DNA of 22,598 nucleotides, taken from the NCBI RefSeq assembly GCF_006345805.1, contig NW_021836782.1, positions 1 to 22,598 on the forward strand. Reading direction: 5' to 3'. Position 1 is the stretch's first letter, and each line of letters starts with the position of its first letter. The notes under the pieces are model-generated. The model was not told the DNA's origin and did no database searches. It saw nothing but the letters and a program-made list of their open reading frames with translations. This stretch comes from Octopus sinensis (Eukaryota). Made by a program: the position numbers and the translations under genes. Positions 13,467-15,139 of the stretch are shown in pieces.

Positions 13467-15139
13467 TATTTCATTACATTTGCCATAAAGGCATAATACA
13501 GATGAAAGCTCGCGGGCTGGACACAATCATGATGATGGAATGAAAAAAGAGATGGTTGGTGGTGGAAGCCCCCCCCATTACTTTCCGATAACATTGTTCT
13601 TTATTTTAAAAAAAAAAAGCACAAATGAGGTATTGAACCTCTTACAACAATTACAAATTGAAGCCTGAGCCTCTTACCAATCAAATCTCACAAAAGTTCA
13701 GCAAATATTTCAATCGTTCTTTCAGATCGAGGTGCTAAGCTTCTTACCAAAATCACCAAGTTCAGATTAAGGCACTAAGACCTCTTACTCTACCTACCCG
13801 ACTAAGTCTCTTGCCGCCTACAGTCACAAGCCGGGGCCCCATAAAAGTTAATTGTATTCATCCTTGGTAAAGGAATCCATCATCCTCTAGAAATAATTTT
13901 CCTCCATGACCTCCGCACCACCTGCGGAGGCCAATCCGGGCTTTCCATTGTAGGACAGGACCTCCTGTTCCCGACCTTCCAGATTCCTCCAATCTTCTCT
14001 ACGGCACCTCCCTAAGAAAGATCACAAATTCCTCATTGTTACACTGGGAGGGGTCACAGTTACCGCCGTCGGTGACATAATTCCCACCGACGAGATTTTA
14101 GGACATACCGGTAGTCGCCGGCACTGTCCCATTCTTTTTCTTCTTTTTTCTCGTCTTTGATACGGGAGGGGTGGTTCCTCCGCTTTAACCAGAGCATCAT
14201 CCCTCTCTCCCACAGCTTTGGGGTCCTTCGGTGAGCATCCGTTGTTGCCCACCTTTTTCCTTTCCCCCTGTTTTTTTGGGGGGGGTCTACCTCCTCGACC
14301 ATCTCCTTCACACTCTCCGAAGGAGGAGGGGGAGATCTTCCTCAACCAATTGTTCCATGACCCTACTCTGGTCCTGGGGACAGTTCTTTTTAATGTGGCC
14401 TGGTTCCAGGCACAGCTGGCACATGGGCGAGGGCGTCCCTCAAGTATCACCGGGTACCTGCAACCGGCCATTTTCAAAAAATCTAGAAATACTAGATTTT
14501 TGGCTGATTTGGTCCATAGGGTCAAAACCGCTTTTGACCCCAACCATCACCCAATCAATTTTTACATTGGGGAGACTGGCTCCGCTGCCACCCAGACCCC
14601 GGCGGATAGTGTCCTCTATCCACTCGTGTTCTATTCCGGGTGGCAAACCACAGACCCAAGCCCTCGTCAACTTCCTCCCACAATATGTGGGAAGAAACAA
14701 AATCTCTTTGCCCTCCAAGGACTGGCTCGCAAATTTGTGAGCCACCTCAGGGGTGTCAAATAGCAACCACACCGTTGCATATTTTACCCCACTGGAGATG
14801 AATTTAATAGTTGGTAGATACTCTACCAACTCCCTTTCGATAACATTCTTTTGAAATAGGGCGATGGTGTCGAGCGACTTGGACTAAGTCCTCATCGCCA
14901 CCGTCCTCTCTTCACAGTCTTTCAACCACTGTTTGGGTAGGACAATTTCCCACTCCAAAAACATTGTCCTTGTTCTTTGCCATGTTTTTTTAAAATAAAA
15001 GTCCAAATATAGTTCAGATAGAAATTCAAACAAAGCAGGAAGAAAAATCAAAAAATCAAAAGGAAGTCACAACAAAATGGAAGGATGAAAAAAGAAAACA
15101 GTTCAATAAAAACACTGACAACGAAACGCATGCACAGTG
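13467..15139 (-). mobile_element. ORF1-only (HAL1-like) non-LTR retroelement, copy 1
   Basis: T-rich 5' UTR (~14984-15139), one gag-like ORF, ~420-nt 3' UTR ending AATAAA; flanked by GGAAGCAAGCTTCTT (13452-66) and GGAAGCAAGATTGTT (15140-54); no RT or endonuclease sequence. Confidence 0.7.
13887..14983 (-). pseudogene. LINE ORF1p-like nucleic-acid-binding protein (RRM-like region + CCHC zinc knuckle), disrupted
   Basis: Frames join to ...VEYLPTIKFISSGVKYATVWLLFDTPEVAHKFA...GRKLTRAWVCGLPPGIEHEWIEDTI...YPVILEGRPR-MCQLCLEPGHIKKNCP; C-X2-C-X4-H-X4-C at 14380-14421; several frameshifts and one in-frame TAG near 14885. Confidence 0.7.

What the first reader, a model, noticed from the sequence alone, without database searches (positions are those of the whole stretch)
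13627..13789. 3' UTR carries four GTAA+hairpin repeats that mimic the element's own target site
Seen (element sense): GTAA-GAGGT-CTTAGT-GCCTT (13769-89), GGTAA-GAAGC-TTAG-CACCTC (13729-48), GGTAA-GAGGC-TCAG-GCTTC (13660-78) and GTAA-GAGGT-TCAAT-ACCTC (13627-45). Three form 5-bp stems whose innermost pair varies compatibly (U-G, C-G, U-A). The target has the same layout, GGTAA-GAAGC-TT-GCTTC, and repeat 2 contains TGGTAAGAAGCTT (13737-49), a 13-nt identity spanning the reconstructed nick site (12/13 to the right-hand TSD copy). Inference: either the RNA pairs with the target strand to guide or stabilise priming, or one protein recognises the same motif on RNA and target, or the repeats are relics of captured target. 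This is the most novel-looking signal in the window.
Basis: partly seen in the sequence, partly recalled or inferred. Interest (0 to 1): 0.8.

Follow-up and report, generated by a model that had tools for sequence, protein, structure and literature searches.

The report
Target-like repeats in SINE-homing octopus LINE
A small, ORF2-less LINE-type retrotransposon that sits inside an octopus SINE carries four degenerate copies of a short motif that really does resemble its insertion site. The evidence fits a family-typical 3' UTR repeat array that shares or captured SINE sequence better than a purpose-built structured mimic.

Summary
The sequence facts hold. Four GTAAGARG units lie at 13627-13789 (- strand). 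The motif occurs 8 times in the window against 0.87 expected, and every hit is in this array or its duplicate. Unit 2 shares 13/13 nt with the reconstructed insertion site (p about 3e-4 to 1e-3).

The structural claim is weak. Only one hairpin beats shuffles, the UTR as a whole does not (z +0.4), there is no covariation signal, and the target "hairpin" has a 2-nt loop.

New context:
- The target is a tRNA-derived octopus SINE, with a 15-bp TSD.
- The unit [SINE 5' part + 1.67-kb element + TSD] is tandemly duplicated, so the array recurs at 15384-15548.
- The element encodes only an ORF1p-like protein (two RRM-like folds plus a CCHC knuckle).
- Two 23-30% diverged copies in Octopus sinensis join a SINE head at the same nucleotide, which suggests site-specific homing. 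Both lack a comparable 3' UTR.
- Distant relatives with other targets also carry GTAA-type arrays and a conserved GGTAAGT box.

Best reading: an intrinsic, internally duplicated UTR module that shares SINE sequence by capture, not a dedicated mimic. A functional guide role is not excluded (about 0.12). Genome-wide copy analysis is the decisive test.

The parts
13627..13789 (-). The finding: array of four paralogous units (U1 13788-13769, U2 13748-13729, U3 13678-13660, U4 13645-13627). Consensus TGGTAAGAGGYTYAG-RCCTC-AATYTG. Tandem copy 1.
15384..15548 (-). The same four-unit array in tandem copy 2. It is identical except for a 1-nt insertion in the U3 loop.
13737..13749 (-). TGGTAAGAAGCTT in U2, 13/13 identical to the reconstructed SINE insertion site (also at 15496-15508).
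13467..15139 (-). Element body, copy 1 (1673 nt): 5' UTR, decayed ORF1, 3' UTR. No ORF2.
15225..16890 (-). Element body, copy 2 (1666 nt). It is 99.4% identical to copy 1 at aligned bases, and most differences are 1-nt indels.
13887..14983 (-). ORF1-like reading frame of copy 1. Start ATG is at 14983 and the TAG stop at 13889-13887. It is broken by frameshifts and two in-frame stops. The CCHC knuckle is at 14421-14380. It is 79% identical to P0001.
13452..13466 (-). Target-site duplication AAGAAGCTTGCTTCC, 3' copy of copy 1. The other copies are at 15140-15154 (AACAATCTTGCTTCC), 15210-15224 and 16891-16905 (AAGAATCTTGCTTCC).
13351..13451 (-). 3' remainder of the interrupted tRNA-derived SINE (AATCCACATGGTTCCAGGTTCAGTCC...GGATTTGGTA), followed by (TA)n.
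16891..16928 (-). SINE 5' head (AGGCGCAGGCGTAGCCGTGTGGTAAGAATCTTGCTTCC) abutting copy 2. The duplicate head is at 15140-15177, abutting copy 1.
13446..16955 (-). Two tandem units of about 1758 nt. Each is [about 26 nt of unique flank + SINE head + element + TSD + AATCC]. This is a DNA-level duplication or an assembly artefact, not two retrotransposition events.
13465..13470 (-). AATAAA hexamer straddling the element/TSD junction. A second AATAAA lies at 13600-13605, after a T11 run at 13608-13618.

Best explanation
Shown:
- The four units are paralogous copies of one roughly 26-nt module. They form a degenerate internal duplication lying between the ORF1 stop and the 3' end of a 1.67-kb, ORF2-less LINE derivative.
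- Its only protein is ORF1p-like: two RRM-like folds plus a CCHC knuckle.
- This copy lies in the tRNA-like head of an octopus SINE, between box A and box B, with a 15-bp TSD. The unit [SINE 5' part + element + TSD] was later duplicated in tandem.
- Units U2 and U3 share more sequence with the insertion site than chance gives.

Inferred:
1. The family homes to this one SINE position. Three diverged copies share the 5' junction, and their SINE heads do not follow the phylogeny of the element bodies.
2. The array is not a dedicated structured mimic. It belongs to a type of 3' UTR short-repeat and hairpin array that related octopod LINE families carry whatever their target.
3. The extra identity to the SINE is shared descent. 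SINE sequence next to the nick enters the element's RNA because the terminal AAUAAA straddles the junction, so transcripts should end 15-25 nt inside the SINE. Such flank-bearing 3' ends are what anneal to the nicked strand of the next SINE. One such junction, or a short SINE patch copied by template switching, became internal and was amplified fourfold.
4. On this view the weak stems are the inherited GAAGC/GCTTC inverted repeat of the SINE rather than selected RNA structures.
For: - Paralogy: 79% column identity among the units, and motif enrichment of 8 against 0.87 expected.
- Identity to the site: p = 2.9e-4 to 1.4e-3 for U2 and about 0.01 for U3. The U3 alignment runs through the whole TSD and on into CAAT beyond it.
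- The units match the local AAGAAG/GCTTCC SINE variant better than the canonical SINE.
- Insertion into the SINE: removing the body plus one TSD copy restores a SINE that is colinear with intact copies.
- Homing: L001 and L002 have the same head/body junction, with 0-3 nt of 5'-end variation and unrelated upstream flanks. Body identities are win-L001 76.5%, win-L002 69.8% and L001-L002 69.0%. The heads differ at 3/38 for win-L002 (P = 0.001 given the body divergence) and 7/38 for win-L001, and the L001 head is of the canonical SINE type. An ordinary SINE with the AAGAAGCTTGCTTC variant exists at L003 6889-6952.
- LINE nature: the AlphaFold model (pLDDT 81) hits tandem-RRM proteins. Relatives carry zf-CCHC. 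The distant relative L131 has Exo_endo_phos + RVT_1 + zf-RVT ORF2s.
- Family-typical arrays: L130 carries six to eight TTGTAAAGT-type repeats, L131 several TTTTTGYAA repeats in each copy's UTR, and L132 two GGTAAK + GCCTCG/CGAGGC hairpin modules.
- AATAAA lies at the junction.
- Precedent for annealing of read-through flank: PMC6530143.
- No selected structure.
Against: - Read-through RNA would carry AAGAAGC... but not the TGGT that lies upstream of the nick. U2 and U3 both have TGGT, so an intact SINE patch or a functional link explains it better.
- No A-tract follows any unit.
- The last 34 nt of the element are not significantly similar to the array (p = 0.35), so 'old 3' ends' is not directly visible.
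- Relatives with non-SINE targets also have GTAA-type arrays, so the GGTAAG core may owe nothing to the SINE.
- Only one copy (duplicated) with this UTR was available, so conservation, copy-number variation and co-evolution with the target are untested.
- L001 and L002 have no SINE tail downstream. Their 3' junctions, and hence true site-specific insertion, are unproven.
Confidence: 0.4

Rival explanations
1. Intrinsic family motif, with the similarity coincidental. The units are amplified copies of a GUAAG-type RNA signal that this LINE group uses for its own purposes: a 5'-splice-site or U1-snRNP-like box, an ORF1-stop/ORF2-start junction signal, or an ORF1p binding site. The SINE carries GGTAAG only because that stretch is the D-loop region of its tRNA-like head.
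For: GGTRAGT lies 11-395 nt after ORF1 in L130, L131, L132, L133 and L002. It forms TAA-GGTAAGT-N-ATG exactly at the ORF2 start in L131 and L133. GTAA-type arrays and hairpin modules occur in L130, L131 and L132, which are not in the SINE. All four units read GUAAGA at positions +1 to +6 of a splice-donor consensus (sequence).
Against: Beyond the shared TGGTAAGA core, U2 matches 5/5 further bases, and U3 matches GCT..GCTTC.AAT. The whole-match p is about 1e-3. The positional homologue of the box in this element seems to be the decayed GAATACAATTAAC about 60 nt upstream of U1 (by eye against L002, not significant), so the units are not simply that box.
Confidence: 0.27
2. Functional target mimic. 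The internal target-like units pair with the nicked SINE strand, whose 3' end ...AAGCTTCTT is complementary to AAGAAGCUU. Alternatively, they are bound by the same protein surface that reads the SINE DNA. Either would give or stabilise sequence-specific integration.
For: There is real 13/13 and 20/24 identity spanning the nick, and the family appears to home to this site. RNA-target annealing does enhance integration in R2Ol and R1Bm (PMC6530143).
Against: In the known cases the annealing sequence is at the extreme 3' end, whereas these units lie 140-320 nt upstream of it. Priming on them would give 3'-truncated copies. Three of the four units have drifted from the site, and there is no sign of selection. 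L002 has no such unit in its remaining UTR.
Confidence: 0.12
3. The 'target' is not a target. The 38-nt SINE head would be part of a composite mobile unit, or be added by RT template-switching onto SINE RNA. In that case the shared 5' junction in three copies reflects common descent or a switching hotspot, and the array/SINE similarity is an intra-element repeat.
For: All three copies carry the head. L001 and L002 have no SINE tail downstream. The heads share GCTTCC.
Against: In the window the TSD plus a colinear SINE tail prove insertion into a resident SINE. Head and body similarities disagree. The head starts exactly at the SINE 5' end, yet the body is full of T-runs that would stop Pol III (plus general knowledge of Pol III termination). 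GCTTC-type sites occur in ordinary SINEs.
Confidence: 0.2
4. Pure chance. A low-complexity, AT-rich UTR happens to contain a 13-mer of the flank.
For: The comparison was post hoc. blastn-short gives E = 0.043 against the whole window.
Against: Shuffle p is 3e-4 to 1.4e-3. A second unit aligns independently over 24 columns, and the motif is eight-fold enriched.
Confidence: 0.06

Closest known systems
Target-specific APE-type non-LTR retrotransposons (Tx1 and R1 clades, e.g. Tx1L in the Tx1D transposon; targets include tRNA genes, transposons and microsatellites; PMC4640811)
   Same: There is repeated insertion at one nucleotide position of a multicopy sequence, a TSD, and an ORF1 with a CCHC knuckle. 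Distant relatives carry APE endonuclease + RT + zf-RVT and sit in (TA)n or in head-to-tail arrays.
   Different: None of the three copies has an ORF2. The target is a tRNA-derived SINE. The 3' junction was seen only once.
Read-through flank annealing in R1Bm and R2Ol (Anzai et al. 2005 as cited in PMC6530143)
   Same: Target-identical RNA sequence can base-pair with the nicked primer strand. The junction-straddling AAUAAA predicts flank-bearing transcripts.
   Different: In those systems the sequence lies downstream of the element at the extreme 3' end. Here the units are internal (140-320 nt from the end), fourfold and degenerate.
Stringent-type LINE 3' stem-loops with terminal TGTAA-type repeats (eel UnaL2/UnaSINE1, L2 clade; from my own knowledge, not tested)
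   Same: Small stem-loops are associated with GTAA-containing short repeats in the 3' UTR.
   Different: The units are not at the 3' terminus. The stems are weak with no covariation. The SINE tail and the element tail are unrelated.
ORF1-only LINE derivatives such as mammalian HAL1 (from my own knowledge)
   Same: A LINE-derived element keeps ORF1 and the UTRs but has no ORF2, so it would be mobilised in trans.
   Different: It is an unrelated lineage, and here it appears to be site-specific. L130 and L132, and possibly the 1.7-kb Logan contig L004, look like further ORF1-only members in octopods.
5' splice-site / U1 snRNP-binding motifs in retroelement RNAs (from my own knowledge)
   Same: There is a GUAAGA/GUAAGU core in every unit, and a conserved box after ORF1 in relatives.
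   Different: There is no evidence of splicing or U1 binding, and the units carry extra target-like sequence.

Membership tests
Non-LTR retrotransposon (LINE) derivative | Insertion flanked by a target-site duplication; the empty site can be reconstructed | tested here: met
   There is a 15-bp AAGAAKCTTGCTTCC on both sides. Joining the flanks gives a SINE colinear with intact copies.
Non-LTR retrotransposon (LINE) derivative | ORF1p-type nucleic-acid-binding protein (RRM plus CCHC) | tested here: met
   The stitched ORF is 79% identical to P0001. The CxxCxxxGHxxxxC knuckle is visible in the translation. Relatives hit zf-CCHC. The AlphaFold model (pLDDT 81) matches tandem-RRM proteins at E about 1e-5.
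Non-LTR retrotransposon (LINE) derivative | ORF2 with endonuclease and reverse transcriptase | tested here: not met
   There is no such ORF in the window copies, L001 or L002. It is present only in the distant relative L131 (Exo_endo_phos, RVT_1, zf-RVT), and an ORF2 start is present in L133. The element is therefore non-autonomous.
Non-LTR retrotransposon (LINE) derivative | Poly(A) or a defined 3' tail at the junction | tested here: inconclusive
   There is no poly(A). The element ends ...TGTAATGAAATA, with AATAAA straddling the junction.
Target-specific LINEs (Tx1/R1-type) | Independent copies at the same position of the same target sequence, at both junctions | tested here: inconclusive
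   The 5' junction is identical in 3 of 3 copies, with discordant head and body similarity. The 3' junction is seen only in the window. L001 and L002 are 3'-truncated with no SINE tail.
Target-specific LINEs (Tx1/R1-type) | RT phylogeny places the element in the Tx1 or R1 clade | not testable with these tools
   This family has no RT. The relatives' ORF2 was not placed in a clade phylogeny.
Read-through flank annealing (works like R1Bm/R2Ol) | Target-identical sequence at the extreme 3' end of the template RNA | tested here: not met
   The units lie 140-320 nt upstream of the 3' end. RNA ends are unknown. Only the junction AATAAA suggests flank-bearing transcripts.
Structured LINE 3' UTR recognition element (stringent type) | Stem-loop supported by thermodynamics and covariation, conserved among copies | tested here: not met
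   The region has z +0.41, and only U4 reaches z -2.7. 419 of 500 shuffles match the observed pairing. There is no homologous UTR in L002. There is no Rfam hit.
tRNA-derived SINE (the target) | tRNA-like head with box A/box B-like sequences, many dispersed copies | tested here: met
   The reconstructed sequence aligns at 80-85% with further copies in L002, L003 and L132. The box assignment comes from my own knowledge. ARAGORN calls no tRNA.

The most novel reading that the evidence does not exclude
This octopod LINE family achieves sequence-specific homing into a SINE without a sequence-specific endonuclease. Internal copies of the target in its 3' UTR, plus flank carried past a junction-straddling poly(A) signal, act as RNA guides that pair with the nicked SINE strand, or are read by the same ORF1p/ORF2p surface as the DNA. 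Target choice would then be RNA-programmed and would retarget whenever the UTR captures new flank. That could also explain why relatives sit in (TA)n or build head-to-tail arrays.
Probability: 0.12. Interest if true: 0.85.

Novelty: new variant of a known kind. Interest (0 to 1): 0.45.

Why it matters
If the homing holds up, this is a LINE-type element whose preferred landing site is a specific nucleotide in a tRNA-derived SINE. Its RNA carries copies of that site. That would give a natural system for asking how much of LINE target choice is set by RNA-DNA annealing rather than by the endonuclease, a question relevant to R2-style programmable insertion tools. It would also add an octopod-specific group of ORF1-only elements, and of (TA)n- and SINE-associated LINEs, to the poorly described cephalopod mobilome. 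If the similarity is only a captured relic, the value is descriptive: a clean example of flank capture and internal amplification in a LINE 3' UTR.

Tried and rejected
- Rfam (gathering thresholds) and tRNA scans of the window found nothing.
- Pfam on the raw ORFs found nothing useful.
- Tandem Repeats Finder on the UTR gave no call.
- Three protein searches were run. Only P0001 and a 48-aa patch in P0002 are close. The C-terminal half finds nothing.
- Exact-protein look-ups of two window ORFs and of P0022 found nothing on record.
- A metagenome scan with the head/body junction pattern returned only chance hits. None is similar to the element or the SINE. The pattern was too loose and the scan was wasted.
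- Homology of the window 3' UTR to L002, L130, L131, L132, L133 or L004 was not significant, apart from a low-complexity T/A run. My by-eye alignments of a 'single ancestral unit' in L002 and of a 'conserved 3' tail' are therefore dropped.
- The idea that the units are duplicates of the element's terminal hairpin + TGTAA module got p = 0.35 and is dropped.
- Extra SINE homology just after the head (an internally deleted SINE) was not significant.
- I considered a nested whole SINE inside the UTR. It is rejected because only about 25 nt match and the matches are not colinear.
- Penelope-like or LTR readings of the tandem structure are rejected. The repeat unit includes unique flank and consists of two full units.
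Full report
**1. What is at the coordinates**

Read on the - strand, 13789-13627 contains four units:
- U1 GTAAGAGGTCTTAGTGCCTT
- U2 GGTAAGAAGCTTAGCACCTC
- U3 GGTAAGAGGCTCAGGCTTC
- U4 GTAAGAGGTTCAATACCTC

GTAAGARG occurs 8 times in the window against 0.87 expected, and no shuffle reaches 8. All hits are in this array or a second copy at 15384-15548. Aligned, the units share 79% of columns, with consensus TGGTAAGAGGTTTAGTGCCTCAATC. 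They are therefore paralogues of one module, spaced 33-70 nt apart. Tandem Repeats Finder does not call them.

**2. Structure**

Three units can draw a 5-bp stem, but the energies are small: -4.3, -6.3 and -6.7 kcal/mol, with z of -0.7, -1.5 and -2.7. U2 does not form the stem. The 261-nt region is no more stable than its shuffles (z +0.41).

On the 4-unit alignment 90% of cells pair, against 40-58% when the partners are slid. However, 419 of 500 within-column shuffles do as well, and only one pair changes on both sides. The inverted repeat is therefore inherited from the ancestral unit, and covariation is not shown. The target's GAAGC-TT-GCTTC would have a 2-nt loop and is not the predicted fold.

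**3. The match to the target is real**

TGGTAAGAAGCTT (13749-13737) equals the reconstructed empty site. With 200,000 dinucleotide shuffles of the 427-nt UTR:

| Comparison | p for a 13-mer |
|---|---|
| 40-nt site | 2.9e-4 |
| 166-nt SINE, same strand | 8e-4 |
| 166-nt SINE, both strands | 1.4e-3 |

. U3 aligns separately over 24 columns, through the whole TSD and into CAAT beyond it (p about 0.01). Both units fit the local SINE variant better than the canonical SINE.

**4. What the 'element' and 'target' are**

*Tandem duplication.* Self-comparison shows that 13446-15204 and 15204-16955 are 98.2% identical tandem units. Nearly all differences are 1-nt indels, which looks like long-read noise.

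*Unit anatomy.* In - sense each unit is about 26 nt of unique flank, then a SINE head (AGGCGCAGGCGTAGCCGTGTGGTAAGAATCTTGCTTCC), then a 1.67-kb body, then AAGAAGCTTGCTTCC and AATCC. After the second unit the SINE simply continues (ACATGGTTCCAGGTTCAGTCC...GGATTTGGTA, then (TA)n).

*The insertion is real.* Removing the body and one 15-bp repeat gives a sequence colinear, without gaps, with ordinary copies of an abundant octopus tRNA-derived SINE found in L002, L003 and L132. The insertion and its 15-bp TSD are therefore real. The tandem repeat includes non-SINE flank, so it is a DNA-level duplication or an assembly artefact.

*Coding content.* The body has no RT or endonuclease ORF. Stitched across frameshifts, its reading frame is 79% identical to one protein, O. 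sinensis LOC115225585 (P0001). That is the only close hit among 5.8 billion clusters. P0001 models well (pLDDT 81) as two RRM-like domains, and Foldseek hits SFPQ/NONO/UP1 at E about 1e-5. A CCHC knuckle follows these domains.

*Relatives.* A full HMMER scan finds 47 distant relatives; all that carry a source name are from octopods. Among them:
- L131 (O. vulgaris) has ORF1 followed by an ORF2 with Exo_endo_phos, RVT_1 and zf-RVT, arranged in head-to-tail copies.
- L133 has the start of such an ORF2.

The element is therefore an ORF1-only, non-autonomous member of an octopod LINE group.

**5. Does the family really target this site?**

Two other copies could be fetched, L001 and L002. Their ORF regions are 76.5% and 69.8% identical to the window copy, and 69.0% identical to each other.

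Both begin with a SINE head that ends ...GGTAAG(T/A)AG(C/T)TTGCTTCC and is joined to the body at the same nucleotide:
- window: CACTGTGCATG
- L002: ACTGCGCATG
- L001: TGTGCATG

Upstream flanks are unrelated.

The heads do not follow the bodies. Window and L002 differ at 3/38 positions (P = 0.001 given 30% body divergence). The L001 head is of the canonical SINE type (GGCTGTGTGGTAAGTAG). An ordinary SINE with the AAGAAGCTTGCTTC variant exists (L003 6889-6952), so the head variants are SINE subfamily traits.

A composite unit transcribed by Pol III is unlikely, because the body is full of T-runs (Pol III termination is general knowledge). I therefore favour independent insertions at one SINE position, at about 0.7.

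One caveat remains. L001 and L002 break off into microsatellites soon after ORF1 and have no SINE tail downstream. Their 3' junctions are unseen, so a template-switch or composite origin of their heads is not excluded.

The bottom-strand nick implied by the TSD is CTTCTT|ACC, a pyrimidine-run/A site of the kind APE-type endonucleases use (inference).

**6. Is the array a target mimic?**

*Evidence against a purpose-built mimic.* Relatives that are not in the SINE have comparable features in the same place:
- L130, flanked by (TA)n on both sides, has six to eight TTGTAAAGT-type repeats.
- L131 has several TTTTTGYAA repeats in each copy's UTR.
- L132 has two modules, each with AATGGTAAK plus a GCCTCG/CGAGGC hairpin.
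- A GGTRAGT box follows ORF1 in L130, L131, L132, L133 and L002. It sits exactly between the ORF1 stop and the ORF2 ATG in L131 and L133.

*Evidence for a real link.* The identity extends well beyond the GGTAAG core (section 3).

*Other copies are uninformative.* The one other copy with some post-ORF1 sequence (L002, about 145 nt) has no GTAAGARG and no significant alignment to this UTR. That copy is old and truncated.

**7. Mechanism I commit to (confidence about 0.4)**

The array is an internally duplicated UTR module that shares descent with SINE sequence at the insertion point.
- AATAAA straddles the element/TSD junction (13470-13465), and a second AATAAA lies at 13605-13600. RNAs that use the terminal signal should therefore end 15-25 nt inside the SINE.
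- Such an end (AAGAAGCUUGCUUCC...) is complementary to the 3'-OH strand of a nicked SINE.
- Annealing of read-through flank to the target is known to boost and sharpen integration in R2Ol and R1Bm (PMC6530143).
- A former junction of this kind, or a short SINE patch copied by template switching, became internal and was amplified fourfold.

Steps shown: paralogy of the units, identity to the site, insertion into the SINE, and the shared 5' junction. Steps inferred: homing, where transcripts end, capture, and internalisation.

Weak points:
- TGGT lies upstream of the nick yet is present in U2 and U3.
- No A-tract follows the units.
- The element's last 34 nt do not resemble the array (p = 0.35).

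**8. Rivals**

| Rival | Confidence |
|---|---|
| Intrinsic GUAAG-type signal (splice-donor/U1-like, inter-ORF signal or ORF1p site) with coincidental similarity | 0.27 |
| True functional mimic or guide | 0.12 |
| The 'target' is part of a composite or template-switched unit (this bears on homing, not on the array itself) | 0.2 |
| Pure chance | 0.06 |

**9. Comparison with known systems**

It works most like the target-specific APE-type LINEs of the Tx1 and R1 clades, whose targets include tRNA genes, transposons and microsatellites (PMC4640811). It also resembles the flank-annealing behaviour of R1Bm and R2Ol.

Membership in a clade cannot be tested without an RT. The stringent-type 3' stem-loop model fails on position, stability and covariation.

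I found no paper describing a SINE-specific LINE in cephalopods, but that literature search was shallow.

**10. Verdict**

The structural and covariation gloss is not supported. The targeting idea gains support from two further copies. 'Mimicry' is the less likely of the explanations, though it is not excluded. I rate this a new variant of a known kind, of moderate interest. A genome-wide census in the octopus assemblies would settle it.

Noticed in passing
window 13446-16955: A perfect head-to-tail duplication of a 1758-nt unit that includes about 26 nt of non-repeat flank. The two copies differ almost only by 1-nt indels, which suggests either a very recent duplication or a long-read assembly artefact.
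   Followed up: partly
window 21140-22030 (+) and 22440-22598 (+); related piece at 2287-2476: 5'-truncated C-terminal fragments of another LINE ORF2 (weak zf-RVT hit; ...RPDIVVRDHEEKKCFLIDVSIPADDNV...). They are interrupted by (ATA)n and unrelated to the element in the finding.
   Followed up: partly
L131 58-9026 (O. vulgaris OX597840): Autonomous relatives (ORF1, APE, RT, zf-RVT) lie head-to-tail. Each 3' end (...GGGTAA(A/T)AATAAAA...) runs within about 15 nt into the same GACGTTACTTTGACTTATTCATTGAT that starts the next copy. This suggests self- or array-directed insertion.
   Followed up: partly
L131 5328-5342; L133 1845-1860; L132 5165-5180; L130 7148-7160; L002 17659-17670: A conserved GGTRAGT box lies just after ORF1 across families that share only 23-30% protein identity. 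It forms TAA-GGTAAGT-N-ATG at the ORF2 start in L131 and L133. It matches the 5' splice-site consensus, and its function is unknown.
   Followed up: partly
L130 5550-8000 (O. vulgaris OX597833); L132 3300-4000; L004 1-35: ORF1-only relatives of about 1.7-2 kb are flanked by (TA)n: on both sides in L130, and on the 5' side in L132 and L004. This suggests microsatellite-specific insertion in sister families.
   Followed up: no
window 13893-13855 (-) and L002 17625-17672: Directly after the ORF1 stop, both copies have TAG-AGG-ATG and a short 11-14 codon ORF (MMDSFTKDEYN* and MVEDAGTSDVEGEL*). This may be the stump of a deleted ORF2.
   Followed up: no
window 17288-18065, 18580-19110, 12880-13350, 19420-19700: The window has a very high load of microsatellites and minisatellites: (ATA)n within a 228-nt repeat, a (GAT/CAT)n block of about 500 nt, and (CA)n/(TA)n/(TC)n runs. 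Two diverged direct repeats (10209-10391 and 12693-12875, 77%) and an inverted pair (3914-4026 and 9588-9703, 79%) also occur.
   Followed up: no
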